From IMG/VR virus record IMGVR_UViG_3300044731_002337, positions 124,001-188,000 of that record: 64,000 nucleotides of DNA, one strand, 5' to 3'. Of the stretch, positions 10,005 to 62,758 are shown one piece after another. The notes beneath the pieces are model-generated. The model worked only from the letters and a program-made list of their open reading frames with translations. It was not told the origin of the DNA and did not search any database. Position 1 is the stretch's first letter. Each line of letters opens with the position of its first letter. The position numbers and the translations under genes are program-made.

Positions 10005-10560
10005 TTCTTTATTTTTATGTTATTGGGTGATATGGTTGTTCCACTTGCGTACCTATGTGCAATTCTTACATTTAAATGAAACCAGTTCTAATCTAGTGGC
10101 TATTTATGATCGAGTATTTCAAAAGTTACCTTTGATGGATGCTCAACTCTACATCACCTTTGTCATGGTACTCTTTTATGGGTGTGCGATATATGATATT
10201 TACAAACACAAGGAAAATTGGATAGTCGTATCAGATCACTATTTTTTATTAATTTCAATACGTATGATCATGATGAGCCTATTACCATTGAAGGCTTCGG
10301 ATCAGATGATCAGAGCAAGTGATGTATGGGATGTGTATACAGGGGCCTTGGTGAACGATTTATTCTTTTCTGGCCACGTAAGTTTAATTGCCTTGTTTTA
10401 TTTCCAGTTTGGGGAGCATTGGTATGGTTATTTGGTAATGGGAGTCGCAGTATCCATGGCCATGCTATTATGTCGTATGCATTATACCATTGATATCCTG
10501 GTAGCACCATTTATTAGTTTTGGGGTGGTGCATCTGCGAAAGTCTTGTTTTGGAGCATAG
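9997..10560 (+). CDS. Sphingomyelin/IPC-synthase-like PAP2_C membrane enzyme
   Basis: DLFFSGH and RMHYTIDILVA match the D3 and D4 catalytic motifs (H, H, D triad); multiple TM segments. Confidence 0.8.
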   Translation: MDISLFLCYWVIWLFHLRTYVQFLHLNETSSNLVAIYDRVFQKLPLMDAQLYITFVMVLFYGCAIYDIYKHKENWIVVSDHYFLLISIRMIMMSLLPLKASDQMIRASDVWDVYTGALVNDLFFSGHVSLIALFYFQFGEHWYGYLVMGVAVSMAMLLCRMHYTIDILVAPFISFGVVHLRKSCFGA

Positions 10561-22779: not shown

Positions 22780-25700
22780 TTATGATGAGCAAGTATTGCA
22801 AACAACTGGTGTAGTAAAATTGAATTTGGTGGGCTTATCAATGGTGCGGAAATAGTAGCTGGCTGTTTTGAGGCCAAGATTCCAAGCAAAGCACCAGTAC
22901 TTGACAACTTCGATCGCCATATTCTCTCCACGTTTCATGTAGACATTGAGACTGATACTTTGGTCGACAAAACGAGAGCGATCGGCAGCCATGAGAGTAA
23001 TTTGGGCAAGTGGGATATCTACAATGGATCGGTAACGTTTCTTAATGTAATCCGGAATGGAAGCAATGTCGGTGAGTGATCCATTATTCGCTAGAATTTC
23101 ATCGTGAACAGGAATGGTAGATTTGGCATCAAATTTCCAAAGACCTGCTTCTTTGAGATCTCGTACCAGGTATTTGTTGAAGACATTGTATTCTCCAGTG
23201 TTCATGTATCGTTTGAAGCTACAGGCCAGGGCAGGTTCAAAGCATTCAAAGTTTCCTAAAATGATGGAAGTACCTGCAGTGGGCATATGAGCCATTAACA
23301 GGGAGTTGAGCATTTTGTTGGGTTTGGTCTTGATATCATGACGTAATTGGTCCCAGTTCCATCCGACACTTGTAGTAATATAGTCATGATGGGGTCTCTT
23401 TTCATAAATCTTTTGAGCCTGATTGTATTTGTCCCATAAATCTTGTTGTAAAATACCGGATTCAATGGGTGATCCAGCGATACTAGGATAATTGCCCCGT
23501 TCTTGAGCCAGGTCATGGGAACCTTTTAGGGCGGCATAATACATGGTTTCAGCGATTTGATAATTGAGACGTTGTGCTTCTTTTGAATCAAAGTCGAGTT
23601 TGAGGATCATAAACACATCTGCGAGTCCTTGAATGCCAATGCCAATAGGTCGATGTCTCATGTTGGAACGCCTTGTAGATTCCAGGGGATAAAAATTGAG
23701 GTCAATGACTTGGTTCATATGGTACACTAGATTATATACCACTTCATACAATTCTTGAAAATCGTATTGATCATCATGGATAAATGCCTTGAGGGAAACG
23801 GAGCACAAATTACAAACCGCGGTTTCTTCTGGTGAAGAGTATTCAATGATTTCTGTGCATAGATTAGATGATTTGATGGTACCGAGATTTTTTTGGTTGG
23901 ATTTGTGGTTACAGTGATCTTTGAATAGGATGTAAGGTCCGCCGGATTCGACTTGTGATTTGACAATGGCGAGGACAAACTCTCGAATGGGAACTTGTGC
24001 TTCATAGAGCCCTTGTGATTCATACTGGAGGTAGAGTTGTTCAAAAGCTTCACCATGCACGTCATCTAGCCCTCGACACTTTTGAGGGTTCATGAGGGAC
24101 CATACTTGTGGTTGATTGTGTTGATAATCTAGAATGATACGTTTCATGAACAAGTCGTTAACCCATAGAGCATAGAATAGGTCAGTAGCTGAAATGGTAT
24201 TGGCGGTCAAGGGGGATTTCAATTCTAAGAATTCCAAAACATCTGCATGCCATGGTTCTAGATAGACTGCAATGCTTCCTTTACGTTTACCACCACCATT
24301 ATGAGCGACCATACAGGATGTGACATAGGATGGGTCGGAGGACCTTTCCATTTCCAGGTCGAAGCAGTCATCAATGGTGGGTGGGCTGTGAATTACATTG
24401 TGAATAGGTAGACAGAGGTAGTTTTGGACTTGTATGCATGGTGTGAGGCGGCGACCATCTTGATCCTTGGGTGGCCATATCATACGGTATTCATTAGGAT
24501 AAATCTCCTCAATCAGAGCAAAAGAATATCCAAGTCGGTTAGCACAATATTCCAACGAATGCTTCTTTTGGGGGGAAACATTCTTTAACGTGGGACCTTG
24601 AAGTTCAAGACCTTCCATGAAATCGGCGACTTGGTCTAAGGGGGCGAATAGAATGGAGGCAGGAATGTCTTGTCGATTACATTGAAGTAGACCCATTAAT
24701 TGACCTTCAGGGATAATGATTTCCGTAGTGGAAAGACAGCGAACAGATACAATGGAAGATAACCAGGTTCGATCAATGTCTGGGCTTAGGAGGTGAAAGG
24801 TGATGAGTCCTTCTTGACATTGCCAGTTCATATCTGCGGTGATGAGGCCCAAGAGTTTTAAGAGATTTGAGTCGACATCAGGGATTCGTTTTTGGAGTTC
24901 AATGGTGTTGCAAATAGCGAGCCAGTGTTTGCGGGGATCGATTTCGTGGATGGTGGTGTAAAAGGGGAGAGCTCTTGATCCAAAGGTGTTGTCAATGACG
25001 AGAATAGGGTGAGAATCGGTGATGCCATGTGATACACGGTGATTAGGGAAAACTAAATGGTGGAATTGGAGTGATTTCTTGGTGGAAATAATTTTCTGAA
25101 TATGGTGAAAGTCTCCAAAACGGTTCATGACAAGATCATTGACTTGTAAGGATTGAATTTTGCGCCAACCAGTGGAAGTCATGACCCGGGTATCACCTTG
25201 AAAGCATTGGTCGACATAGCATGCTACAGAGTTATACACTTTGAGCATGGGTCCTACACCTCCAGTGACTCCATTAGTACCCTTGATATACGAATTCTTG
25301 CTACGGGTATTGTGGATGTTGATGCCAATGCCACCCGAGTGTTTGGAGATGATGCTACATTGCTTCCATCGATCAGCAATACCTTCAATGGAATCATCCC
25401 CAGCATATAAGAGAAAACATGAACTCATTTGGGGATGCATGGTTCCCGCGTTAAAGAGAGTAGGTGTAGCCATGATACATTTGCCCAGAGATAAATAATG
25501 ATACAACTGTATAGCTCTCTTGGTATTCATAGGGTTCAGGGCAATCGCTATTCTCATCCACATAAATTGTGGTTCCTCCAAAGGTACTGACACCATGATA
25601 TGCTGCCCATTATGTTCTACTCGCTTGTAAGTGTTGAGAAGGTATTTGCCATTAATAAGTTGGGTAATCGCCGCACAGTCAAATATAATGTTTCGATCAT

Positions 25701-26124
25701 GGTCAATTGTGGCTTCAATGAGGTCCATGTCAGGAATGTGTTCAAATGATTCGTGTAAGAGTGGTGACAACTCTCCCGTGCGTGGATTCACATTAGCGCG
25801 TGCTAGTCGAACATATTCTTTAAACGAATTTGGGGTGGATTTCTGGAGATTGGAGACTATAATTTGGCCGGCAAAGAGGTTATTGTCTGCAAAATAAGTA
25901 TCATGGGCGGCAACATTCGCAGATATAGTATCGAGTTCAGAGGTGGAAATGCCATCTGTAATTTGGTCAACTGTAGCACGGCATATTTTGAAAATTGACA
26001 CATCAATGGGACGTTTTAAGATACGGGTCATATGATCACGTATCGAGTTAAGACGTGCAGTAATTCGTTGAGGATCAATGGGTTCTTTTGTTCCATCACG
26101 GGTAGTAACACATCGAGGTTCCAT
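22780..26124 (-). CDS. nrdA: Ribonucleotide reductase large (alpha/R1) subunit, class Ia, containing an intein
   Basis: N-terminal ATP cone, ATPTLFNAG, MSSCFLL, GGIG, KGTNG, YVDQ/GGGKRKG, LEPWH, SNLCTEI, RPIGIGIQG, MPTAGTS, DQSIS, C-terminal CxxC. Confidence 0.97.
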   Translation of the reverse strand: MEPRCVTTRDGTKEPIDPQRITARLNSIRDHMTRILKRPIDVSIFKICRATVDQITDGISTSELDTISANVAAHDTYFADNNLFAGQIIVSNLQKSTPNSFKEYVRLARANVNPRTGELSPLLHESFEHIPDMDLIEATIDHDRNIIFDCAAITQLINGKYLLNTYKRVEHNGQHIMVSVPLEEPQFMWMRIAIALNPMNTKRAIQLYHYLSLGKCIMATPTLFNAGTMHPQMSSCFLLYAGDDSIEGIADRWKQCSIISKHSGGIGINIHNTRSKNSYIKGTNGVTGGVGPMLKVYNSVACYVDQCFQGDTRVMTSTGWRKIQSLQVNDLVMNRFGDFHHIQKIISTKKSLQFHHLVFPNHRVSHGITDSHPILVIDNTFGSRALPFYTTIHEIDPRKHWLAICNTIELQKRIPDVDSNLLKLLGLITADMNWQCQEGLITFHLLSPDIDRTWLSSIVSVRCLSTTEIIIPEGQLMGLLQCNRQDIPASILFAPLDQVADFMEGLELQGPTLKNVSPQKKHSLEYCANRLGYSFALIEEIYPNEYRMIWPPKDQDGRRLTPCIQVQNYLCLPIHNVIHSPPTIDDCFDLEMERSSDPSYVTSCMVAHNGGGKRKGSIAVYLEPWHADVLEFLELKSPLTANTISATDLFYALWVNDLFMKRIILDYQHNQPQVWSLMNPQKCRGLDDVHGEAFEQLYLQYESQGLYEAQVPIREFVLAIVKSQVESGGPYILFKDHCNHKSNQKNLGTIKSSNLCTEIIEYSSPEETAVCNLCSVSLKAFIHDDQYDFQELYEVVYNLVYHMNQVIDLNFYPLESTRRSNMRHRPIGIGIQGLADVFMILKLDFDSKEAQRLNYQIAETMYYAALKGSHDLAQERGNYPSIAGSPIESGILQQDLWDKYNQAQKIYEKRPHHDYITTSVGWNWDQLRHDIKTKPNKMLNSLLMAHMPTAGTSIILGNFECFEPALACSFKRYMNTGEYNVFNKYLVRDLKEAGLWKFDAKSTIPVHDEILANNGSLTDIASIPDYIKKRYRSIVDIPLAQITLMAADRSRFVDQSISLNVYMKRGENMAIEVVKYWCFAWNLGLKTASYYFRTIDKPTKFNFTTPVVCNTCSS
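24298..25206 (-). mobile_element. Intein (303 aa) with degenerate LAGLIDADG domain; C-extein +1 residue is Gly
   Basis: Starts CFQGDTRVMT, ends CFDLEM...CMVAHN; removal gives seamless YVDQ-GGGKRKGS; blocks LLGLITADM and FMEGLELQG are eroded LAGLIDADG motifs. Confidence 0.92.
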
Positions 26125-30582: not shown

Positions 30583-31623
30583 GTTGTAATGCATCTCAGA
30601 CATTGGTCCATGCGTGTCGATTCATGGAATGTTTAATGGAAAAAAATGGTGTTAGTAAACAAGAGGTGAAGCATATGTACTCATCTGGACAAGAATGTGC
30701 ATTCTTATATCATCCCAAGATTAGTGTGATATTGTTTCGCCCTGATGATCCTACAACAACAACTTATTTAAAAATGAGTGTGTTAGATCCAGTATTCATT
30801 CCTACCGATACAGTGATTGAACAAGGGAAGAAGAAAACAGAAATACAAACCTCCAACTTAACTGAATCAGTGTGGAAACATTTTAGGGTATTTATTCTTT
30901 TTTTTTTGTCTTTCTCTTGTTTGTTTGTTTAATGTTATGATAGGCTACGTATCCTCTTGTGAAACGATGGATTATGGTCTCCTCAGACATTAATACATTT
31001 ACCAATACTCTATTACTAGAACTAATGTGGATGTCTGAATCAATGTCTATGCAACACTTTAAGTACATTGAATTGGGAGATCCTCGAATTATTACTGAAC
31101 ACAAGTTTCAACCATTGAGTGTGGAAAGAGTGGATAAGGCTCCAACTGAAAACTGTCGACAAATTCTAGTGCATGATATCTTTGCACGATTTTATGGAGC
31201 ACAAGTAGGGCATGTATTGAAATGTCAAGGTATCCATAGACAATCTGGTGAACAAACAGATTATTTACAGGTATATTTTTTTTCGTTTACATGTACTTTA
31301 CAGCTTATACTATGTTTTAGGTATCTTATATTCATTACATTAAAGGAAATAAGTTGAAACCAGCAAAACTTCCAGAACAAGCAAAACAGGAAAGTATTGT
31401 GTTGGAAGAAGAGGAAGAGGAGGATGAGGAACTGGAAGAAGAAGAAGAAGAAGAGGAGGAAGATGAAATAGAGGAAGTACAAGTAGAGGAAGAAACATCA
31501 GAGTCTGAAACTGAATCGGAAGAGGAATCGGAATCCGAGTCTGAGGATGAAGAGGAAGATGAAGATGATTCTGAATCGGATGAGGAGGACGAAGAGGATG
31601 ATGATGATGATGATGAGCAATAA
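30579..31623 (+). CDS. rpb5: RNA polymerase subunit RPB5 homolog with acidic C-terminal tail; three exons join(30579..30887,30944..31270,31321..31623)
   Basis: RPB5 C-domain ITEHKFQP...QILVHDIFARFYGAQVGHVLKC...YLQV; three track ORFs join in frame (939 nt) after removing two GT-AG introns. Confidence 0.8.
30888..30943 (+). other. Spliceosomal-type intron 1 of RPB5 (56 nt, phase 0)
   Basis: AGG|GTATTT...T-rich...TTTAAT...GATAG|GCT; splicing joins WKHFR to ATYPLVKRWIM in the frame of ORF 30959. Confidence 0.8.
31271..31320 (+). other. Spliceosomal-type intron 2 of RPB5 (50 nt, phase 0)
   Basis: CAG|GTATAT...TTTTAG|GTA; joins DYLQ to VSYIHYIKGNKLKPAK in the frame of acidic ORF 31354. Confidence 0.7.
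31405..31616 (+). repeat. Poly-Glu/Asp low-complexity coding repeat
   Basis: GAA/GAG/GAT runs. Confidence 0.9.
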
Positions 31624-38028: not shown

Positions 38029-38980
38029 TCATTGGATTACGGGAAAGGGAAGTAGTTCATTCACAGAAATATTTTCAGCAATGGCGATAATGGTGTCTGT
38101 AACTTGTTTCCATGTAAAAGGTAGTGATTGTGAGGGACCAGAAATGATCCATTGTGCATCACGGTATTCGCATGCCACAACAGCATTCTTGGGGAGAGGA
38201 TAAGGACAAATAGCGGCCGAAATGATGACATTATCTTTGGATTTGAGTAGATAGTCGCCTTGATAGAAGCGGTAGTATTGTACTGTCGAAGGAGTTCCAT
38301 CAGGCCAAGGTAATTCTCGAATCGATTCAAATGGTTGAATAGTACAATAAATGCGATGTGATCGTAATCGTAATTGGGGTATTACTTTAGATCCGTATGA
38401 TGATGAAGAAGAAGAAGAAGAAGATAATGCTTCAGATGAAGTATCCATGAAATCCAAGGCTTCAATAGGTAGCATGTAGGTAAATTTTAGAATATGACTC
38501 ATTTCCACTAGTGGTTTGACATGAAGTCCAAAGGGAATTTCAGGATGATGCACTACCTTATTATACAATGTGGGGTAAAGTGATGATTTCACTACGCAAG
38601 GGGATACAGAGATGGAGGTAGTTGAAGCAGTAGGACATTTCGAGATCATTTGAATGGCTTGAATGGCTAATTCCCATCGTTGATCGTACCTGAGATGTTT
38701 GGCAGGGTTTCCACACATCATATAACAATCCATAATCGTAAAGCAAAATCCTTGGTCGTTAAGTTGAACCATTTCTCCATCGAGTACGGTTCCAGCAAAT
38801 AATGGGATAGGTAGTTTGGAAGGCATATGTTTCAGTTTGGTGGTCTTCTTTTGTTGATCCATGAGAAAGAGTTGTATGCAGTTCTTGTATGTGGTGAATA
38901 ATAATAGCCCGCGGATACCATTTAAGTAAGGTACCATGACATAACGTTGAGGTTGGAATTCGAGTTTCTTGGGTCGAAAG
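38029..38980 (-). other. Degenerate mRNA-capping guanylyltransferase plus OB domain fused to RPB1
   Basis: YVMVPYLNGIR (motif I KxDG changed to YLNG), TVLDGEMV (III), FTIMDCYMMCG (IIIa), YDQRW, VVACEY...W, TIIAIAENISVNELL. Confidence 0.75.
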
Positions 38981-41900
38981 GGGATTACATCTTGAATCAT
39001 TTGAAAGTGATAGCCACTACCAAGACCCATATTCTTATTGCACATGGCAGCAGCTGCAATAGTATTCCCTGGATCCCACCTTCCCATATCTACATTTTCC
39101 ATAACGTGTCTAGATGACTCTTCAAACGAGGCTTGCTGCATAGGTGCAATACGTTTGGCAGCTTCATTCTTCTTGTATCCTTCATGTATACCAGTCATGG
39201 TCATGTATCGAGCCATGAGTTCCAAGTGTCGTGCATCAGTAGAATCTCCCATGACTAACACGAATTCATGGGTCAACACTTGGGTTGTGGCATAAACGCC
39301 CATAAACTTTTGGGTATCGCCGGTATGAGTGCTGTACGATTGCTGAACATCGACTAATGGGTGCGTATTCCAAATTGAAAAATCAGATTGGTCCGTAATG
39401 CATACCCAGCGATTTGAAGCTTGTTGTTCAATAATATACTTGGAGATGCCATCCAATTTACCCCTCACAATGGTTTGGTGAAAGATATTGTAAGCGACGC
39501 CGTACAGGGCATGTGTGGTTGGATTCTTGACCTTGCACTTGATTTGTCTCAAGGCGAAAGTCCAAATGCCCACGGAAGGTGTTAAACGAATACAAAATAG
39601 GGTCTTGTCTACTTTGTGAATCGCGGAAATGGGAATTTGGATGGTATGGTGTAATGCGAGAATGATATTGTAGTCTTGTACCAAATAATATGCTTTGAGC
39701 TTCGGGTCAATATGGAGGCGGATAGTCATACTTGATTCATCAATCTTAGGGTAGTCAGAGAGGATTTCAGAGAGATATACAGTTCTCCAGGTCATGGCCG
39801 TATAATGGACTTCAGCTTCCGTGACATGAGGTAGAAAGACAATATTCATCATGGCTAGGCTATTATTGGCATCAATCAAGTTATTCAATTTGTTGACTCC
39901 TGTAACTTGCGTATTCTTTTTCCCAGAGGAGTGAGGCGACTTTAAATTACCTTGTGTGTATACTTCTCCCACACTATGAGTCGCATTCATTCCAATAGCT
40001 TCTCCTGGCAAAATGGTTCTTCTTTGTATCGTATGGTAAATCAATCGAAGTAACTTGTACCAGGCAACACTAGACAACTTCCATACCACCAATACATTAT
40101 GAGGGCAGCACCACACACGTAATAAAACATGAAGCTTGTGGTGTTGGGCAGGAACAAGTCTCTCCTTGACCATACTTTGCCAGATATAGGTAAACGACGT
40201 AATGATTTCGGTTTCCATAAGATCAGGTGATGAAGTATAAGTGGTGGCTTGTTGAAAGAGATGCTTGATATGAAAGGGAGATTTGAATGTCAAGTCTTGA
40301 TCCTTGATTTTATCCCAAAGTAACCATGACTCACGATAGAATACATGATGATGATGATTAGGCCAAAGTTCTAGAGTTGGCGGTGTAATTGTTTCCCATA
40401 CCAAGTATTGAGGGTCAAGAGAATCACCTCCATAAGTAAACCAAACGGTTGGACCAGGTTTATGGATATCTTCTTTGCGAAAGGCATGTTGTCTTCGATT
40501 GCCAGAATAACTGTCTACTGCATGGCCAAAAGTGTCTGCAATAATACCCATATTACAATAGGCCATCTTCTTCTCCAAGTAGCCTGATTGTGAAGTACCC
40601 TTGATCTTGTTGATCACTGATTCCGTGGTAGGTTGTGCTTGGGTCATTAGATCATGAAAAGTGAGACCCATAGCATAAGGATGTTTGATAAAGCCATGCG
40701 CTACAAGTGATTTGTCGTGAGGGTGGAAATGGCTAGTCACATTAGGAATTCGTTCATGTGTGAGATACGCTTGTCCCACAACACCCATCATTTGAGATAA
40801 GGATGCCCAATTTGCCTTGGTGCCACTTTGAATCATAGCCAAGTATCCATTGTGTAACGTATTTCGATCCCTTGCTGTTACCAACTCTTCAATCCGATCT
40901 TGAATCGACTTGGTGTAAAACTGAATGTGCTGTCCAACTACATCTTCAGGTTGCTCCTGCATATTTTGAAGCTTGTGATAATTGGGACATGAATCCGCAT
41001 CTTCCCAATACATTTGGTGATAGCTACAAGAGTGTCCACGCATGTCTAGATATTCTTGGGTGATTAGATAGCCTTCATACAGGAAATCCATGGCTTCATC
41101 GAGGGAATGGTACATGATGATATCTCTAAGGACGCCATTGAGAACTTTTTCCGTAAACACGGTATGAATGTGAATGGAGCTAGGTAGGATACAATGCATC
41201 ACTTGTCTCCCGGTCCATAATTGGCGAGGTTTCCAAACTGCAGGTGGAGGTATGGTGATGAACCGAGTCACATGTCCTAGTAACACCGAGACTTGATCCT
41301 TGGTCAAAAATGTATCTTCATGGGTCAATAAAAAAGCGCCAATCACTGGATTTTGACTGAATTTAATCCATAGTCCTCCATCTTTCATGGTGTGAAACTT
41401 GACCGCCATAATCTCCATCACCTCTGCCCGAGCTTCAATGGTTTGAGGAATGTGTACACTTAGTTCATCGCCATCACAATCCGCATTAAAAGGTAAAAAA
41501 ACACTCACGTGAAGATTAATGACAAACGAATTGGGAATCACTTTGACTTTGAATCCCATAGTCGATCCACGATGGAGTGTTGGTGCTCGATTCACAATCA
41601 CCCAATCATCCTCCAAAATGTGACGACGAACATAAGCCACGTCATGCACGTTAATGTCGCGACGGTTATCATAGTATTCCAAATCAATGGTGCGTCCATC
41701 CTTCATTTGCATGGAATTGGCGCCAGGATAGTGATGTGGGCCATTCAAAATCCATTTGTGAGCTTGGTTCATGTTGAAGGAAGATACGGGGACGTTAATG
41801 GTCAGTCCCATACATGTGGATTGCGGGAGGCCACAGTAAGTAGGGTGAATCCATGTACAACCTTCCAATACAAGTCGTGCATAATGATATTTTCGCCACG

Positions 41901-43109
41901 CCACAATAAAGCCTTGCATACGGCTACTTTGTTTCGATTTGCTAGTCTTCTTAAACTTGGTATCCACTGAATTGGGGGTTTTACCATATTGGGCATTCTT
42001 GGGGATTAGTTTGCGATACTTTTCAAAGTGGAATGCAGAGATTTGGTTTTGGAGGTTTCGCCAGGCACATTGATTGGTCACGTTGCCACAAGACGCTTCA
42101 TTGGAAAGTTTACATTTGCTCAGTTTCTGGTTAATGAGTTGAAGCTGGGCCCGGTATTGTTGCCGTTGTTGAATATTGAGTTGTTTTCGTTCTTCGCTGG
42201 TTAAGGATTCTTTTTGAAAGCAAACTTTAAAATCTGGATGAATGAATCCCTTGTATAGATATTGGGAAAGAATAATGGGGTCCTTGGATTGTTGCAATTT
42301 CATTTCGAGTAAAAGTTTGCTTTGGAGGACATTTTTGAGCATCTTGGTCCAATCATTGGGGTATTGTTTAGAGCCATTTTTGGTAGGGAAAGTACTATTA
42401 GGTCTAGTGGTGAGTGCCGGGACAGCTAGAGCCGAAAACATTCGAGCCTTGGGTAAGTTGTATTGTCCAAGTCCCATAATATGCATCATTTGTTCATTCT
42501 TCGAAATGTCCTCCAAGAGTTTTTGAATTTCAAATGGACCAAACGAAATGGGCTTCCATGATGGATTGGATTGGTAAAGTTGAAAATCAGTCTTGGAAAG
42601 TGTTACAACTCCCCGTATAATATTATCATGACCCGATTCTGTTGTCCATTTGATATAGGATTTACCACATTCACATGCCCTGAAGAAACGAGTATATTTA
42701 AGTAACGTATTGAGTCGTTTTTCAGAGGGTAGTTGAAGAACTTTCTCGCACATATGGGAAGTAATGCGGAGGCGTTGACAATAAAAGCAAACTAGATTGA
42801 GTATTTTCAAAAGGGTTGACATGGCGCCTACATGGAAACAGGGAATAGGTAATTCCATATGTCCAGTATGTCCAGGACAATTATGGGTTGTCTCTCCACA
42901 TTGCTCACATAATGAATCCCATGATTTACATCCCAAAACACCTACAAGAAGAAAAGTAAAGAAAGATCAAAGGGCGAAAAAAAAAATGTACCTGAAGTAA
43001 GATCTGTATTGGTTTTGATTTCTAATACACTTTGTTTACGAACACGATCCGAGTCAATAAGGAAACATTGTAATGCATCTACTTCACGTAATGGTGGAAG
43101 TGAATCCAT
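38029..43109 (-). CDS. rpb1: RNA polymerase largest subunit (RPB1) with fused C-terminal guanylyltransferase-like domain; exons complement(join(38029..42941,42992..43109))
   Basis: CEQC...CPGHTGH, CFYC, NRAPTLH, FNADCDGDE, GTSQSGYLEKK, PGEAIG, EVYTQGNLKSPHSSG, LGSGYHF; exon 1 supplies RVRKQSVLEI; spliced length 5031 nt is in frame; an upstream in-frame ATG at 43178 is possible. Confidence 0.93.
42942..42991 (-). other. Spliceosomal-type intron in RPB1 (50 nt, phase 1)
   Basis: CAG|GTACAT...polypyrimidine...TTGTAG|GTG; joins TDLTSG to VLGCKSWDSLCEQC. Confidence 0.85.
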
Positions 43110-49804: not shown

Positions 49805-51783
49805 ATGGATAACAATATATGTCCTGTTTGTTCAATTCAATGTGCCAATGTCGAGTCATTTCGTGACCATGTAGCCCATGAACATGAAGACTATAAACAT
49901 TTTGCATGTGAATTGCATATTGCGGAACAACCTTGCAAGGCTAGATACAAGTATAAGAAGGATCTACTCATTCATCAAAAGAAAGTGATTCATGATCAAG
50001 TGAGGCAATATGTATCTCCAGCGTATCATCAACTAAGATTAAGGACAAAACATGCTACGTCATGGGTGCATTGGACCTCATTGTATGTTCAATATAAATC
50101 TCCCAGTGATCCGGTATTGTCGAATGAGCAAAAAATGTCAGTGGAGCAGTTGATGAGTAGGCTGAAGCAGGAGGAGATGTGGGTGGAAGAAGCAGTTTAT
50201 GATTCATGGCAATTTGAAGAAATGGTGGAGCAATTGGAGAATTATTGGAATCAGGCCAAGACAATTGGAAATCAATTACGTCTATTATTTTGGCATGTCC
50301 TGTATAAGTTCTGTGTGGATCCTTTACTTTCGGATTCGGTGGTTCATTTTTTACACAAGAGGTCCAGTAAATATTTTATCAAGGCGACCAAAATTGTGCA
50401 AGGATCATTAGGTGTACAAATCATGGACCCTTATCAAATGGTGGAACTACGTTATCGAATCTTGGTAGAACTTCAAAAGCAACAGCAAGAAGTATTGGAT
50501 CCATTTATTCTTCAATACTATCGTGAGAGATCATCTAAGATGCCATTACTCGAGTTTGGATTGAAATTAAGGTGTTGGATAGATTTGATGATTCGGTTTA
50601 CCAATATTCCTATGAGAATTCAAGCGACCAAGGAACTTCATTTAGGGTATCCGTTTCGAAAGACGGATGTGGCCGAACATCATGTGGCAAGATTATTATA
50701 TGAGAATGGTGTCTTTACCCGTTTATTCATGTTTGATAAAGTGGGCAAAACAGGTAAGCATTAATGATTTTTTTGTTTGTTTGTTTGTTGTTAACTATGC
50801 ACAAAAAAGGTGCTCATCGTCCAATTCGATGTCCTTTACCAGGATTTATAACTCCTTACTTATTATTCTACATTAAGTATTGTCGACCAACGGAAAAGGA
50901 GAATTCCTTGGTATTTCTCAATGCGACGGGCAGTGCATGGAAACAAGCATCAAGGGATATTAAGATGTATATGCAAGATGTATTGGACATTCAAGTGAAT
51001 GCATTAGATCCTTCAGGTCGTTTTGTTCATGGGTCAAGGTCTATCATGTTGGCGAATTATGCATTGCGTGTACGATTTGATCCATTGAAGTTACAACAAT
51101 TTGCTACCTTGATGAGACATTCGTTTGCGACGATGAATTCTTATTACTTGTTATGGACGGATTGGGCGACAGCGAGACTTGCCATGTCCGACTTTAATCA
51201 AGCGTTTGGTTTATCTGCCCCCGAAGAAAAACCATGTGATTTTTCAGCCTTTGATGTCCATTTTTCTTTCACTCAGGGTATAATGGAAGAAAAAGAAGTA
51301 TCGCCACAGATTGAAACATTATCATGTAAACCTGCAGTAAATTCTCGTTCATTCGAAGAGGTAACATCGTCATTCGAAGAGGTAACTTCTGGTTCATTTG
51401 AAGGGGTAACATCGTCATGCAAACCTTTGGTAACTTCTGGTTCATTTGAAGGGGTAACATCGTCATGCAAACCTTTGGTAACTTCTGGTTCATTCGAAGA
51501 GGTAACATTGTCATGCAAACCTGCGGAAACATCGTCATGCAAACCTGCGGTACAAGAGCAAAAGAGTGGAAATGGTTGTGACAAGTGTGGTAAAGTAATG
51601 ACGATTTATGGTCCTTATGGGAAGAGGAAGCATGTGAAGCAATATGGATGTTATTGGTATGAATGTAAGGATTGTGAGTTGAAGAAATGGATACCATTAG
51701 GATATATGACGGAATATAGTCATTCACGAAAATCCAAGAATCACGATAAGATTATGGCATTTATTAAAGCTTCTTTGAAATAA
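49805..51783 (+). CDS. C2H2 zinc finger plus tyrosine-recombinase-like protein; exons join(49805..50753,50810..51783)
   Basis: N-terminal CPVC...HVAHEH and C...HQKKVIH; TNIPMR, DK, HGSR, MRH and SYY give the R-K-H-R-H-Y set; two track ORFs join in frame (1923 nt). Confidence 0.7.
50754..50809 (+). other. Spliceosomal-type intron (56 nt, phase 1)
   Basis: CAG|GTAAGC...TTAAC branch-like...AAAAG|GTG; the spliced product DKVGKTGAHRPIRCPL aligns with the intronless paralog DDKNMNSHLPIIVPV. Confidence 0.85.
51314..51550 (+). repeat. Tandem array of 48-bp GGTAAC-family units and sub-units inside the CDS
   Basis: VTSGSFEGVTSSCKPL repeats with degenerate flanking copies. Confidence 0.9.
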
Positions 51784-52363: not shown

Positions 52364-53404
52364 TTATCTGTCCCGTTTAAGGACTAGACTTTTGAGTTGT
52401 TGAACATTGAGGTCTATTGCCGGGTTAAATTGGATGCGATGATTAGGGAAGCAAGCGGTGAGTGATTCTTGCAGAGTAGTATCCGTTTTAGGTGGTAATT
52501 CTGGGAAGTGTTGAAATAAAGGGTGAGAGTCGAATAAGAGTGTACATCGAGATAATGTTTCGATGGGGATGACATGAGTGGTTACTGTGGTACCCCATTG
52601 AAAGTTACCTTGTCGAATAGCTTGACCCATATCTTCCCAACTTTGTAAAGTGGATCGATTGGAAGGGTATAAGAGTTTTACATTTTCATGTTGATTATAG
52701 GATTGGTGATCGTAGAGTGAAGTAGATACTTGACCCCATTTTGTACCTGTAGCATATCGTTCTTGTTGCATTTGGTGTGTATGTCGCATTACTAAACTCA
52801 CATCATGCATAATGGATTGATTAAAATTGGTAACGACTCCAATGGTATCTGCTATAATATGGCGCATGTTATGGAGTAAACGTGGTCGAATAATTCGTTC
52901 GAGTTTCAAGTGTGTGGCTATAAACGTCTTGACATCTGAGGCGATACGTGTCCAAGGTGTGGCGCCATGAAATAGGTAAGGTCCAGGGGCTCGTAAATGG
53001 AGAATATAATATGCTAAATAATAGGATAATGTATCTCCAACAGGTACAATGATAGGTAGATGACTATTCATATTTTTATCATCGTACCAAATGCGATGAA
53101 AGCGTTTATTACGAAATATAAGTTTGCTTGTATAGGGTACATGATGTAGGGATCCTTGTTCTTCCCAAATCAAATGTTCAGAGGCTTGACTACGATGAGG
53201 TACATTAGTCACACGTAATGCTAGGTCAATCCAACATTTGAAAAACATTTCTTTATTGGGTATACCATCTATTCGGCTTGGATGATTCGTCATAAACAGT
53301 TCCATATCAGGTTGCCATTTTGCAAGTTCATGTACAATGACATTACGAAGAATATAACGATCAAAAGCAGTCAAATCTTCTACAGCAGGCATTTGTAAGT
53401 TCAT
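52364..53404 (-). CDS. Tyrosine-recombinase-like protein, paralog of 49805..51783
   Basis: TNVPHR, DDK, LHNMRH, VMRHT, QERY. Confidence 0.7.
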   Translation of the reverse strand: MNLQMPAVEDLTAFDRYILRNVIVHELAKWQPDMELFMTNHPSRIDGIPNKEMFFKCWIDLALRVTNVPHRSQASEHLIWEEQGSLHHVPYTSKLIFRNKRFHRIWYDDKNMNSHLPIIVPVGDTLSYYLAYYILHLRAPGPYLFHGATPWTRIASDVKTFIATHLKLERIIRPRLLHNMRHIIADTIGVVTNFNQSIMHDVSLVMRHTHQMQQERYATGTKWGQVSTSLYDHQSYNQHENVKLLYPSNRSTLQSWEDMGQAIRQGNFQWGTTVTTHVIPIETLSRCTLLFDSHPLFQHFPELPPKTDTTLQESLTACFPNHRIQFNPAIDLNVQQLKSLVLKRDR

Positions 53405-59207: not shown

Positions 59208-59326
59208 AAAAATGGTTATGCTTTGGGGTGCATTGTAGTCATTTGAAATTGATATAAATGAAAGTTAGGGGAAAAGTTCCGATAGGGGGTTATTAGGGTT
59301 TACTTTTTATCTGTTGTTTGGTGATT

Positions 59327-62300
59327 ATGGATGAGGAACAGTGCCATATATTGCGTAAGGAGTTGTTGCAATTATGGATTCAAAAGATAGGATTTCAAAC
59401 TGATGAAGCACAAAATTATGATTCGGGGCTTGAATCTGTGTTGGAAATGTTGAAGGAGTTGTTGGTGGTATCTGAAGTGCACAATGGGGAGAAGCATGAA
59501 ATTAAGTTGGCAAATTGTTATTTTGTACGCCCATATGAGAATGGTGTAGGATTGGATACGCCATTAAAAGCCTTGTTACATGGAAGTTATGATGCGTTGA
59601 TAAAGGGTGATTTCTTGTATTCCAAGTATGGTGAAGGAGGACAATTATTATTTCAAAACAAGATTACGGGATATACGATATGTGAATTTCCAGTCATGTT
59701 GGGGTCAGTGTTGGATCATCAATCTACAGGGTTGACTTCAGCGCAAATCTATCACAAGCGTTATCTCAAGTCATCATGTTTCATAAGCAACATGCATGTA
59801 CGAATATTCCCAGCAGAAGAGTTTATTGTGAATAACCGGATATTGCATCGGCCGGCAAATGGATCTGAAGTGAGATCGACGTTTTTCTTTGGGGAGAGAC
59901 GATACCGTACGAATAGTACATTGCAAATAGGCTGGAAACTCAAGAATAACAAGGGTATTAAGTGGTGGCGAGAATATCCTAGATTGGAGATTAAGGTGCC
60001 GTACGAAAATCCTCCCATATTTATTTCCTTGATGGTGGTGGTGATGGGCTTAGGATATATAGTGGAGGAGTTTGTGGAATGGATTGCTCGGTTTCGACGT
60101 GTACCTGCTTCGACCAAGACACTCTCCTTACAACAAGTCGTTTTATCTGATGTCTGTGGATGCCAAAATTCGTATGATGCCTTGCTATTGATTGCCAAGT
60201 TGTTCAAGAGGACACATAAGATTAATTTGGACCAGGACAAGGCAGAGTCAGCCAAGGAAATCTTGAGACGGGAGATATTACCGCATTTAACGCACTATTC
60301 TCAAAGTACCAATGAAGCGGTATTGTTATGGGAAAGACGACGCAAGATGGTGATGTTCGCTATGATTGTGGCTGATATATTTGATCGTATGGATGGAAAG
60401 AGTTCGAATGTGAATAGCCGAAGTTACAAGTTTATTCGGTTCAAAACACCTATTCAATTCATGTTGGAGTTGATGAGGAAGAATGTGAAGAATGCTTGTA
60501 CGGTAGCCAAGGCGAAATTGCAGCATATGTTGAATAACAAGTTGCCCATTTTGTTGCATTACATGTTGCAGCCATCGATGTTTGAATTGACAACGGCGAT
60601 TAAGAATGGTAATTTTAATCCTTCGGGGAGGAAGAATACCAAGTCGAGTACGCACAATACGGGCAAGACGGATGTTATTACGTTGGGATATTGTTCTGAT
60701 TCCTATCCGGAGCAAACTGGCAAGATTATTAAGAAGCCAACGCAACAGTGTCATGATTTGAAGGCGAATGTATCTGATCCGTCGCAAGTAGGGTATGTTT
60801 GTATGTACATGACCCCTCAAAGTAAGCATTGTGGTGTATTTCGTCACAAGGCTATGGGAGCTCGATTTTCCCCAAATGTGAATATGATCAAACTGCAACA
60901 ACAATTGGAGCGTTTGGTTGGAGAATGGATTGTTGACGACTATGTTCATGGTGCCTGTGTCATGTATGACGTCTTTGGTGGATTCATGGGCTGGATATTG
61001 AATCCTCGAGAGTTTTGTGGTTACCTGATTGAAAAGAGACGACAAGGTTTATGGTATCGTCATGGAAATATTGAGTATATTGAGGAGGAGAACCAGATAT
61101 GGTGTAATGTAGGGGGTGATCGATTGGTACGGCCATTGATTGTTGCTTCAGCTTGGCCCAAGTTATGTCATGGTTTGGATCGATATCGTTTACAATTTTC
61201 CTTGTTGCAACAAGAGGGGATTATTGAATGGTTGGATCCGAATGAGGAGCAATGTGGATTGGTCAAGGTGGCAGCTACATTTGAGGAAATTATGGATCCA
61301 TTAGGTGGATATACTCATATTGAGATTCATGTATCATTGGTATTGGCAGTGAATATGACTCGAGCGTTTTTCAATTACAATTCGGGTCCACGAGAATTAT
61401 ATACTGGATTAATGAATACCAAAGCGTTATCCACCAAGTTACCAGACATTGGGGCTACCAAGTCTCATATGGTGTATGGTCAGCAATTCCCTTTAATGTC
61501 TGATCCTGTGACGGAGGCGTTAGGGAATCGAGCGCGTGAGCCAAACGGGACGAATGTGACAATTGCAATCATGCCTGCCCATGGGAATATGGAGGATTCA
61601 GTAGAGTTTTCTCAAGGATGTGTGGATTTAGGGATGTTCATGTCGGTGCAACATAACATGGAGCTGGTGGTGAGGAATGAAGAGTGTGAGATTCGCAAAC
61701 CGGATGCTCGATGTGAGTTGAAGAGTAGTGAACATGCGTATCGACATTTGGATGATAATGGCATTGTGAAGATTGGATCCCAGTTGGAAGTTGGTGATGC
61801 GATTGTAGGGATGGTGAATATGAAGAAGCGTAAAAGGTTACGATGTGTAAGTCAATTTCTAACCTCTGGAACGGGTGGTCGAGTTACGGATATCAAGACT
61901 TATATGGATGATAAGAAAAAGATCAAAATAGTGCATGTGACGTATGTATCAGCTCACAATCCAACGGTAGGGGACAAGTTTTTCATTGGACATGGACAAA
62001 AATTTACGGTGGCTCGAATGGTGAGACGAGAAGATATGCCATTTAATCCTATGACGGGGATGAGTCCAGATTTGTTATTCAATCCTCATAGTTTAACTCG
62101 ATCCACTATGGGGATGTTATTGGATATACTTTTCAGCAAAGGGAGGACATTGGAGCCAGAGTTGATTGATGCGTTTGATACGGTGATGTTACATCCGGAG
62201 TTGCATAAGAAGAAGTTACGGAAGGTGGAGGAAGTGTTATTGCGTCATGGATTTTCGATAAGTGGTACAGAGATGATGTGTAATGGGAAAACGGGTGAGA

Positions 62301-62758
62301 TGATGGAATGTCCAATCTTGATGGGTCCAGTGTATGTACACGTGTTGAATCATATCGCCAAGCAAAAATGTCGTCATCGTGATACGGGTCCTATGGCGGA
62401 TGGTACGCATGATCCTCAACTAGGAATGAGGCATGGTGCAATGGAAGGATGGAATTTATTAAGTCAAGGATGTACTGAAGTATTCAAAAGCACCAATCGT
62501 GAAGAAGGAGATAAGTTTCAAGATTTTTTCTGGTGTGAGAAACATGAAATGCCTGCTAATGGATCTATCGCATTGAAAGTATTCCATTGTCAAGCGTGTG
62601 GCAATGCAGATCATGTAGTTCGGTTACAATTACCTTACAAGTTTATATTGATTATGCAAGAGACATTTGCAGCTCATATGGGTCATTCATTACATATCAA
62701 ACCAGGAGATGTACCATTTGTGCATGATCCAACTTTGAATTTTTGGAATCAATCATGA
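59327..62758 (+). CDS. rpb2: RNA polymerase second-largest subunit (RPB2), highly divergent
   Basis: EFPVMLGS, GYVCMYMTPQSKHCG, RLVRPL, GNMEDS, GDKFFIGHGQK, PDLLFNPHS, LMGPVYVHVLNH, C-terminal zinc ribbon CQAC and LPYKFILIMQE. Confidence 0.93.
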   Translation: MDEEQCHILRKELLQLWIQKIGFQTDEAQNYDSGLESVLEMLKELLVVSEVHNGEKHEIKLANCYFVRPYENGVGLDTPLKALLHGSYDALIKGDFLYSKYGEGGQLLFQNKITGYTICEFPVMLGSVLDHQSTGLTSAQIYHKRYLKSSCFISNMHVRIFPAEEFIVNNRILHRPANGSEVRSTFFFGERRYRTNSTLQIGWKLKNNKGIKWWREYPRLEIKVPYENPPIFISLMVVVMGLGYIVEEFVEWIARFRRVPASTKTLSLQQVVLSDVCGCQNSYDALLLIAKLFKRTHKINLDQDKAESAKEILRREILPHLTHYSQSTNEAVLLWERRRKMVMFAMIVADIFDRMDGKSSNVNSRSYKFIRFKTPIQFMLELMRKNVKNACTVAKAKLQHMLNNKLPILLHYMLQPSMFELTTAIKNGNFNPSGRKNTKSSTHNTGKTDVITLGYCSDSYPEQTGKIIKKPTQQCHDLKANVSDPSQVGYVCMYMTPQSKHCGVFRHKAMGARFSPNVNMIKLQQQLERLVGEWIVDDYVHGACVMYDVFGGFMGWILNPREFCGYLIEKRRQGLWYRHGNIEYIEEENQIWCNVGGDRLVRPLIVASAWPKLCHGLDRYRLQFSLLQQEGIIEWLDPNEEQCGLVKVAATFEEIMDPLGGYTHIEIHVSLVLAVNMTRAFFNYNSGPRELYTGLMNTKALSTKLPDIGATKSHMVYGQQFPLMSDPVTEALGNRAREPNGTNVTIAIMPAHGNMEDSVEFSQGCVDLGMFMSVQHNMELVVRNEECEIRKPDARCELKSSEHAYRHLDDNGIVKIGSQLEVGDAIVGMVNMKKRKRLRCVSQFLTSGTGGRVTDIKTYMDDKKKIKIVHVTYVSAHNPTVGDKFFIGHGQKFTVARMVRREDMPFNPMTGMSPDLLFNPHSLTRSTMGMLLDILFSKGRTLEPELIDAFDTVMLHPELHKKKLRKVEEVLLRHGFSISGTEMMCNGKTGEMMECPILMGPVYVHVLNHIAKQKCRHRDTGPMADGTHDPQLGMRHGAMEGWNLLSQGCTEVFKSTNREEGDKFQDFFWCEKHEMPANGSIALKVFHCQACGNADHVVRLQLPYKFILIMQETFAAHMGHSLHIKPGDVPFVHDPTLNFWNQS

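What the first reader, a model, noticed from the sequence alone, without database searches (positions are those of the whole stretch)
50754..50809. Intron present in one tyrosine-recombinase paralog and absent in the other
The spliced sequence FTRLFMFDKVGKTGAHRPIRCPLPGFITPYLLFYIKYCR is colinear with the intronless neighbour FHRIWYDDKNMNSHLPIIVPVGDTLSYYLAYYILHLR. This is internal, database-free support for splicing and indicates intron gain or loss after duplication. The donor GTAAGC and branch-like TTAAC are the most canonical of the four introns.
Basis: seen in the sequence. Interest (0 to 1): 0.6.

Follow-up and report, generated by a model that had tools for sequence, protein, structure and literature searches.

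The report
Short intron in giant-virus recombinase gene
A 56-base GT...AG intron really does split one of two neighbouring recombinase-like genes of an uncultured giant virus; related viruses carry the same intron or lack it cleanly, a good example of a known phenomenon rather than a new one.

Summary
Confirmed. Window 50754-50809 is a 56-nt GT...AG interruption. It sits in phase 1 inside a Gly codon, between two open frames. Removing it gives one 640-aa protein (49805-50753 + 50810-51783). Unspliced, translation stops after 319 aa, before four of the six conserved recombinase-motif positions.

The window is part of a 295-kb giant-virus contig that encodes its own RNA polymerase. Four related viruses have an interruption at exactly this codon. 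Lengths are 46, 39, 44 and 43 nt, all GT...AG, with sequence similarity no better than shuffled controls. Four other relatives have no interruption and read exactly the predicted junction, ...DKVGKTG-AHRPIR...

The tree fits one gain in this gene lineage followed by one or two precise losses. The neighbouring paralogue (52364-53404, minus strand) is uninterrupted in every relative and aligns across the junction without needing intron-encoded residues.

Predicted structures place both proteins in the tyrosine recombinase / topoisomerase IB fold (Z 10.5-12.8), although no Pfam or PDB sequence search finds them. The virus's own Rpb1 gene has a second verified intron (42942-42991, minus strand).

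Spliceosomal-type introns with variable positions are already described in pandoraviruses, chloroviruses and mirusviruses. This is therefore a new member of a known kind. No transcript evidence was available.

The parts
49805..50753 (+). TR1 exon 1 (316 codons plus the first base of a split Gly codon). It holds an N-terminal C2H2-type zinc-finger region, a helical core-binding-like domain, and the first part of the catalytic domain with the conserved Arg (NIPMR) and the DK(VG) motif.
   Evidence: ORF and translation. Weak zinc-finger hit and C2H2 hits in family members. Conserved columns. The model of the intronless orthologue aligns to Cre over both domains.
50754..50809 (+). 56-nt GT...AG intron in phase 1. 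Donor is GTAAGC; TTAAC lies 14 nt from the 3' end; GC is 25% against 39% in the exons; there is an in-frame TAA at 50762-50764.
   Evidence: Orthologous interruptions at the same codon: L003:5953-5998 (46 nt), L006:1750-1788 (39 nt), L012:1061-1104 (44 nt), L013:162-204 (43 nt). Absent in L004, L005, L011 and L014.
50810..51783 (+). TR1 exon 2. It starts with the last two bases of the Gly codon, then the rest of the catalytic domain (HGSR, MRHS, YY motifs), a variable linker with a 48-nt in-frame tandem repeat (51315-51530), and a C-terminal four-Cys GRF-like zinc ribbon. The stop codon is at 51781-51783.
   Evidence: Weak GRF-like zinc-ribbon hit in a family member.
52364..53404 (-). TR2, the uninterrupted paralogue (346 aa). 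It has the catalytic core only, without the zinc-finger region or the zinc ribbon, and lies tail-to-tail with TR1.
   Evidence: The predicted structure matches XerH (Z 10.5), variola topoisomerase IB (Z 10.3) and Cre (Z 10.3).
42942..42991 (-). A second verified intron of the same type: 50 nt, GT...AG, phase 1, in the virus's own RNA polymerase largest-subunit gene. Exon 1 is 43109-42992 and exon 2 is 42941-38029.
   Evidence: The orthologue in L004 is continuous and reads ...DLTSG-ILGCK... across the same point.

Best explanation
The 56 bases are a spliceosomal-type (GT-AG) intron in a giant-virus gene. The virus must pass this transcript, and that of its own Rpb1, through the host's nuclear splicing machinery. 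Splicing joins the two halves of the catalytic domain: Arg and Lys from exon 1, and His-Arg, His and Tyr from exon 2. The product is a 640-aa protein with the tyrosine-recombinase fold. Without splicing, only a 319-aa fragment that cannot be catalytic is made. The intron arose in this gene lineage after it separated from its neighbour paralogue and from the lineage of a more distant virus. It was inherited by at least five sampled viruses while its sequence and length drifted freely, and it was removed precisely once or twice. The sequence pattern, the junction, the orthologue states and the fold are shown. Actual splicing, the spliceosome as the agent, the mechanism of loss and recombinase activity are inferred.
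For: The GT...AG ends, phase 1 and in-frame stop are read directly from the sequence. All nine orthologues read MFDKVGKT-G-AHRPIRCP once the interruption is taken out. Four of them have no interruption in their DNA, including a 40-kb contig that keeps a different intron elsewhere in the same gene. Interruption lengths are 56, 46, 39, 44 and 43 nt (2, 1, 0, 2, 1 modulo 3), so no single frameshift rule works; only removal does. Intron cores are no more alike than shuffled controls (0.44-0.62), except the sister pair L006/L013 (0.69). The 60-nt exon flanks are 73-95% identical. Introns have 22-34% GC against 39% in the exons, and most carry a YTAAY motif 10-16 nt before the 3' end. No Rfam family matches and the junction regions fold no better than shuffles, z about 0. 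Other GT...AG interruptions in the same clade are removable in frame: window Rpb1, L004:7771-7814, L015:9169-9258 and L015:9474-9523. In the tree, intron-bearing lineages are basal and paraphyletic and intronless ones are nested, giving a minimum of one gain plus two losses. Literature: spliceosomal introns with variable positions occur in mirusviruses and in some nucleocytoviruses (PMC12768974).
Against: No transcript or spliced cDNA was seen; everything rests on comparative DNA. The host and its splice signals are unknown. The branch-point-like motif is weak evidence in AT-rich sequence. Three of the four intronless contigs (L005, L011, L014) are short, and I could not verify that they are DNA rather than assembled transcripts. 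The phylum of the virus was not settled. The tree node that separates the two intronless groups is only moderately supported (87/83; AU p = 0.03).
Confidence: 0.8

Rival explanations
1. The intron was not inherited. Unrelated introns inserted independently at the same AG|GT proto-splice site in several virus lineages (parallel gain), and the intronless copies are simply ancestral.
For: The intron sequences of window, L003 and L012 show no detectable similarity to each other. The site is a perfect proto-splice site, CAG|GT. The mirusvirus study reports unrelated introns occupying the same splice position in different genomes (PMC12768974, Extended Data legend). The more distant L015 copy and all remote family members lack an intron here.
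Against: It needs at least four gains at one codon, against one gain plus one or two losses. The sister pair L006/L013 shares recognisable intron sequence, so inheritance does occur. Short unconstrained AT-rich introns are expected to lose similarity at the exon divergence seen here. None of the introns has a second copy in the available sequence, as a mobile introner would.
Confidence: 0.12
2. The intronless relatives L005, L011 and L014 are assembled transcripts (cDNA). On this view part of the presence/absence polymorphism is an artefact of mixing RNA and DNA assemblies.
For: These three contigs are short (3.4, 11 and 1.7 kb), and I could not check the library type of their samples.
Against: L004 (40-kb contig, GCA_013558295.1) is intronless at this site yet keeps another 44-nt interruption in the same gene, so it is unspliced DNA. 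L011 and L014 are about 90% identical to it. The contigs carry genes on both strands. None matches an intron-bearing genome closely enough to be its transcript. If true, this rival would itself be direct proof of splicing.
Confidence: 0.07
3. The gene is broken. The 56 bases are an insertion in a decaying pseudogene, or the two ORFs are separate genes.
For: Prokaryote-style gene callers report two ORFs. In the window an in-frame ATG at 50764 could start the second ORF.
Against: Both halves are conserved at 73-95% nucleotide identity right up to the junction in five lineages. The split would separate the Arg/Lys motifs from the His-Arg-His-Tyr motifs of one domain. The ATG inside the intron is not conserved in the relatives. 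Every interruption is GT...AG.
Confidence: 0.03
4. The gap is skipped during translation (ribosome bypassing of the phage T4 gene 60 kind, or programmed frameshifting) rather than removed from the RNA.
For: Because the context is AG|GT...AG|GT, a GGT codon sits at both edges in the window and a stop follows soon after the first, superficially like a take-off/landing pair.
Against: In L003 the two edge codons differ (GGT and GGA). No stable hairpin is predicted in any of the five. Gap lengths range from 39 to 56 nt. Other interruptions in the clade are phase 0 with different edge codons. From general knowledge, bypassing is not known for cytoplasmic translation in eukaryotes.
Confidence: 0.01

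Closest known systems
Spliceosomal introns of giant viruses (pandoraviruses, a few chloroviruses, endogenous giant-virus elements) and of intron-rich mirusviruses (PMC12768974)
   Same: Short GT-AG introns sit in viral protein-coding genes, including core genes. Their positions vary between closely related genomes. They imply that viral transcripts are processed in the host nucleus.
   Different: These introns are shorter (39-56 nt here, one of 90 nt) than the roughly 80-nt peak reported for mirusviruses. The lineage encodes its own RNA polymerase, and its Rpb1 gene is itself interrupted. None of the introns encodes a homing endonuclease or is repeated. The phylum of this virus was not determined.
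Phaeovirus / Ectocarpus endogenous-virus integrase, a tyrosine recombinase (PMC13236599)
   Same: It is a giant-virus protein with the tyrosine-recombinase fold and conserved catalytic-type residues. Its best structural match is the same as here, XerH (PDB 5JJV).
   Different: No sequence similarity was shown here. This family has an N-terminal C2H2 region and a C-terminal GRF-like zinc ribbon. It comes as a conserved TR1/TR2 pair in the middle of the contig, next to a kinase and a Nudix gene. Integration, attachment sites and terminal position were not examined.
Cre / XerH / lambda-Int type tyrosine recombinases and type IB topoisomerases
   Same: The two-domain architecture and the catalytic-domain fold match (XerH Z 12.8; Cre Z 11.8 over 266 residues; bacterial topoisomerase IB Z 11.9). 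The order of conserved R, K, HxxR, H and Y is the same.
   Different: Identity is 6-15%. There is no hit to Pfam Phage_integrase above noise. The fold alone does not separate recombinase from topoisomerase IB or telomere resolvase.
Introners (transposon-derived introns; PMC12130899, PMC12166617)
   Same: Both involve presence/absence of introns between close relatives. One neighbouring case (L004:7771-7814) is flanked by a 6-bp direct repeat.
   Different: The intron studied here has no second copy in any sequence at hand and no terminal repeats.

Membership tests
Spliceosomal (U2-type, GT-AG) intron | GT at the 5' end and AG at the 3' end | tested here: met
   Window 50754-50809, four orthologous interruptions and four other interruptions in the clade: nine of nine are GT...AG.
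Spliceosomal (U2-type, GT-AG) intron | Removal restores one conserved reading frame, and retention truncates the protein | tested here: met
   The spliced CDS is 640 aa with one terminal stop; the unspliced reading stops at residue 319.
Spliceosomal (U2-type, GT-AG) intron | Intronless homologues carry exactly the predicted exon-exon junction | tested here: met
   L004, L005, L011 and L014 read ...DKVGKTGAHRPIR... from uninterrupted DNA. The paralogue TR2 is colinear across the junction.
Spliceosomal (U2-type, GT-AG) intron | The interior is free of coding constraint | tested here: met
   Lengths are 39-56 nt and not congruent modulo 3. Identity is at the level of shuffled controls while the flanks are 73-95% identical. 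GC is lower than in the exons.
Spliceosomal (U2-type, GT-AG) intron | Branch-point-like YTRAY motif and a T-rich tract upstream of the 3' splice site | tested here: inconclusive
   TTAAC, CTAAT or TTAAT lies 10-16 nt from the 3' end in most of the nine, and T content is 36-60%. Such motifs are common in AT-rich sequence and no chance expectation was computed.
Spliceosomal (U2-type, GT-AG) intron | A spliced transcript is observed | not testable with these tools
   No transcript data could be queried. The length filter of the protein search would also have hidden a 640-aa cDNA-derived product.
Self-splicing or structured intron (group I/II, bulge-helix-bulge) | Conserved RNA structure or a match to a known RNA family | tested here: not met
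   No Rfam hit anywhere in the window. The five junction regions fold no better than shuffles, z from -0.04 to -0.33. At 39-56 nt the element is far too small for group I or group II.
Introner / transposon-derived intron | Multiple similar copies in the genome | tested here: not met
   blastn of all nine introns against the window and the related loci finds only self-hits. Only about 64 kb plus flanks of the 295-kb contig was available.
Tyrosine recombinase / topoisomerase IB superfamily | Catalytic-domain fold | tested here: met
   TR2 model (pLDDT 69): the top 33 rows are all of this superfamily, best Z 10.5. TR1-orthologue model (pLDDT 84): the top 23 rows are all of this superfamily, XerH Z 12.8 with rmsd 3.6 over 185 residues. 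Foldseek gives probability 0.99 but E 0.04.
Tyrosine recombinase / topoisomerase IB superfamily | Conserved Arg, Lys, His-x-x-Arg, His/Trp and Tyr in canonical order | tested here: met
   Invariant or near-invariant R (NIPxR), DK, HxxR, RH and Y across TR1, TR2 and 77 family members. The assignment to catalytic roles is by order and spacing, not by superposition of side chains.
Tyrosine recombinase / topoisomerase IB superfamily | Recognised by curated sequence models (Pfam Phage_integrase and relatives) or by PDB sequences | tested here: not met
   There is no Pfam hit for TR1, TR2 or close relatives even at E up to 10. One remote member hits PF00589 at E 0.06. The PDB profile search gives nothing relevant.
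Tyrosine recombinase / topoisomerase IB superfamily | Site-specific recombination or integration activity with defined target sites | not testable with these tools
   No attachment sites, termini or integrated copies were examined.

The most novel reading that the evidence does not exclude
The window belongs to an undescribed lineage of giant viruses that encode their own RNA polymerase but depend on host nuclear splicing even for the polymerase's largest subunit. This lineage carries a conserved pair of a previously unrecognised tyrosine-recombinase family: one member with C2H2 and GRF-like zinc modules, the other fused to a chromodomain in some relatives. These proteins would act as chromatin-targeted integrases for a latent, integrated phase. 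The clean intron losses between close relatives would then report ongoing cDNA-mediated or recombination-mediated intron removal in viral genomes.
Probability: 0.2. Interest if true: 0.6.

Novelty: new member of a known kind. Interest (0 to 1): 0.4.

Why it matters
The finding gives a clean, database-independent example of an intron in a giant-virus gene. It is fixed by orthologues with and without it and can be placed on a tree as a gain followed by precise loss.

Together with the intron in the virus's own Rpb1 gene, it indicates that this polymerase-encoding virus has a nuclear step in its cycle. It also shows that prokaryote-style gene calling splits such genes in public databases: both halves are deposited as separate hypothetical proteins.

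The interrupted gene and its neighbour belong to a family of about 166 sequence clusters. The family has a tyrosine-recombinase fold that no curated model recognises, and in the cases checked it sits in contigs with giant-virus transcription genes. That makes it a candidate integrase family worth testing. The intron itself fits what has already been reported for pandoraviruses, chloroviruses and mirusviruses.

Tried and rejected
- **Pfam and PDB sequence searches.** Scans of both recombinase-like genes and of 30 family members, and a PDB sequence-profile search, gave no recombinase hit. The fold had to be tested by structure prediction.
- **Foldseek alone.** It was weak (best E 0.29 for TR2 and 0.04 for TR1). 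The exhaustive structural alignment gave the clear result.
- **Naming the virus or host.**
  - Literature searches for the assembly and WGS accessions found nothing.
  - Cluster look-ups gave no accessions or organism names.
  - The Rpb2 protein search found only three close relatives.
  - Rpb2 against PDB was equally distant from archaeal and eukaryotic polymerases.
  - Walking about 9 kb beyond each end of the window found Erv1/Alr, PP2C, a fatty-acid hydroxylase and a Peptidase_S74 domain, but no capsid gene.
  - The phylum (Nucleocytoviricota versus Mirusviricota) therefore stays open, although the gene set looks nucleocytovirus-like.
- **Wider search for relatives.** The metagenome and viral-contig scans with a family alignment returned only contigs already in hand.
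- **Structured or mobile intron.** Both were considered and rejected.
- **Mechanical scan for further introns in the window.** It gave mostly noise. Only three candidates have the CAG|GT...YAG|GT look, and one of these (31271-31320) could not be verified.
- **Bacterial promoter/terminator scan.** It was uninformative.
- **Complex prediction.** None was run, because no binding claim is made.

Full report
**What the window is.** The window has about 38% GC and is densely packed with ORFs on both strands. It encodes:
- RNA polymerase subunits Rpb1 (38029-42936, minus) and Rpb2 (59318-62758, plus);
- both ribonucleotide reductase subunits, the large one carrying a weak, sub-threshold Hint-domain match (a possible intein);
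- an SNF2-type helicase, a Ser/Thr kinase and a Dcp2-like Nudix hydrolase.

It is identical to part of IMGVR_UViG_3300044731_002337, a 294,773-bp viral contig. So the sequence is an uncultured giant DNA virus, not a cellular eukaryote. About 9 kb on each side of the window adds Erv1/Alr, PP2C and a fatty-acid hydroxylase but no capsid gene. I could not decide between Nucleocytoviricota and an RNA-polymerase-encoding mirusvirus. The gene set looks more like the former.

**The observation.** Positions 50754-50809 read GTAAGC...TTAAC...AAAAAG.
- The upstream ORF (start ATG at 49805) runs into a TAA three codons past 50753.
- The downstream ORF is in the frame expected if 56 nt are removed.
- Joining 50753 to 50810 makes a Gly codon (phase 1) and a single 640-aa ORF. 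Without removal the product ends at residue 319.

The neighbour on the minus strand (52364-53404, 346 aa) aligns to exon 1 up to four residues before the junction and to exon 2 from its first residue. In a multiple alignment with orthologues, the two paralogues share the motif DKVG just before the junction.

**Comparative test.** The gene family is rare: nine proteins in the 5.8-billion-sequence search. I recovered the DNA of eight orthologues.

| State at the junction codon | Loci |
|---|---|
| GT...AG interruption present | L003 (46 nt), L006 (39 nt), L012 (44 nt), L013 (43 nt) |
| No interruption, DNA reads ...ACAGGYGCTCAT... | L004, L005, L011, L014 |

- After removal, all nine genes give the same 17 residues around the junction.
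- The lengths are not congruent modulo 3, so only excision restores the frame.
- Intron interiors are as dissimilar as shuffled sequence, except in the sister pair L006/L013. The 60-nt exon flanks are 73-95% identical.
- The introns are AT-rich, unique in the sequence available, and mostly have a YTAAY motif 10-16 nt from the 3' end.
- There is no Rfam match and no stable structure across the junctions.
- L004 is intronless at this site but has a different 44-nt GT...AG interruption upstream in the same gene (L004:7771-7814). It is therefore genomic DNA, not cDNA.

**Polarity.** A more distant virus (L015/L017) keeps the gene order kinase, TR1, TR2, Nudix. So the two paralogues predate that split. 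Its TR1 is continuous at our site but has two other GT...AG interruptions. Removing these gives an intact 620-aa ORF.
- In maximum-likelihood trees rooted on remote family members, the nine orthologues form a clade (100/100). Window and L003, both with the intron, branch first, and the intronless copies are nested.
- The fewest changes are one gain and two precise losses.
- Forcing the four intronless copies into one clade costs 9.9 log-likelihood units (AU p = 0.03), so one loss is not firmly excluded.
- Parallel insertion at the CAG|GT site is the main rival. I give it about 0.12.

**A second intron.** The Rpb1 ORF starts at Pfam domain position 48. Upstream there is a 118-nt first exon and a 50-nt GT...AG interruption (42991-42942, minus strand, phase 1, CAG|GT context). 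The spliced product is 1676 aa. The L004 orthologue is continuous and reads the predicted junction. The virus therefore needs splicing for its own polymerase subunit, which points to a nuclear step. This inference matches what has been argued for pandoraviruses and mirusviruses (PMC12768974).

**What the genes are.** Neither protein hits Pfam or PDB by sequence. A profile search of 1.84 billion representatives found 166 clusters. Most are 550-700 aa with an N-terminal C2H2 finger and a C-terminal four-Cys ribbon.
- The AlphaFold model of TR2 (pLDDT 69) matches only tyrosine recombinases, type IB topoisomerases, protelomerases and Ndc10 in its top 33 rows (Z up to 10.5).
- The model of the intronless TR1 orthologue P0005 (pLDDT 84, 77-sequence alignment) matches XerH at Z 12.8 and Cre at Z 11.8 over 266 residues, covering both domains.
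- Conserved R, DK, HxxR, RH and Y occur in the canonical order.
- The intron falls in the loop just after the DK motif, so exon 1 alone lacks His-Arg-His-Tyr.
- Among viral models, the best matches are uncharacterised or integrase-annotated proteins of algal and amoebal giant viruses.
- Two remote members that I checked lie beside a viral Rpb1 or near TFIIS and XPG genes.
- In L003 the TR2 orthologue ends in a chromodomain.

An integrase role, as shown for phaeoviruses (PMC13236599), is a reasonable guess. It was not tested here, and the fold alone does not exclude a topoisomerase-like or telomere-resolving role.

**Verdict.** The observation and its interpretation stand. The intron is real by every test available short of RNA. 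It is a further case of a phenomenon already documented in giant viruses, so I rate it a new member of a known kind, with moderate interest. The more original by-products are the unrecognised recombinase-fold family and the evidence for rapid intron turnover in this virus clade.

Noticed in passing
window 42942-42991 (minus strand): There is a 50-nt GT...AG phase-1 intron in the virus's own RNA polymerase largest-subunit gene. The first exon is 43109-42992. The orthologue in L004 is intronless and reads the predicted junction.
   Followed up: yes
window 31271-31320 (plus strand): A third intron-like element: 50 nt, T-rich, cag|GTATAT...TTTTAG|gt. It follows a sequence that looked to me like an Rpb5 C-terminus (my reading of the translation; no search was run) and would join it to a highly acidic tail. 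No homologue evidence was obtained, so it may not be an intron.
   Followed up: partly
L004:7771-7814; L015:9169-9258; L015:9474-9523: Relatives carry GT...AG interruptions at other positions of the same recombinase gene, where the window copy is continuous. The L004 interruption is flanked by a 6-bp direct repeat (GATTTG), as seen at some newly gained introns.
   Followed up: partly
L003:6886-8256 (minus strand); protein P0011: The TR2 orthologue of a related virus ends in a chromodomain (PF00385, E 1.7e-9) that the window copy lacks. A remote family member (P0138) has one too. This suggests chromatin targeting.
   Followed up: partly
window 51315-51530: A 48-nt in-frame tandem repeat (4.6 copies, 84% matches) sits in the linker of TR1 exon 2. 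The linker differs in length and sequence in every orthologue. The long minus-strand ORFs here (51269-51727 and 51273-51584) overlap this repeat inside the TR1 coding sequence and are probably not genes.
   Followed up: partly
window 1-64000: GC skew is positive in every 2-kb bin (0.01 to 0.37) even though genes lie on both strands. This is a strand asymmetry not tied to transcription direction.
   Followed up: no
window 22780-26124 (minus strand): The ribonucleotide reductase large subunit (1114 aa) has a weak Hint-domain match (E 6e-4, 20.7 bits, below Pfam's 28.4-bit cutoff) between its N-terminal and barrel domains. It is a possible intein.
   Followed up: no
L004:9529-10981; L006:2554-5231; L013:955-3695: In several relatives, two to four genes sit between TR1 and TR2. 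One has a weak DUF829 match and another a faint Hydrolase_4 match. In the window only about 580 nt separate TR1 and TR2.
   Followed up: no
window 9997-10560; L102:15033-16494: Lipid-related genes are present: a PAP2_C (sphingomyelin-synthase-like) gene inside the window and a fatty-acid hydroxylase just outside it. An Erv1/Alr thiol oxidase also lies just outside. From general knowledge, Erv1/Alr is a usual nucleocytovirus core gene.
   Followed up: no
proteins P0001 and P0067 (database entries): Public protein collections hold the two exons of this gene as separate hypothetical proteins, because prokaryote-style gene callers do not model the intron.
   Followed up: partly
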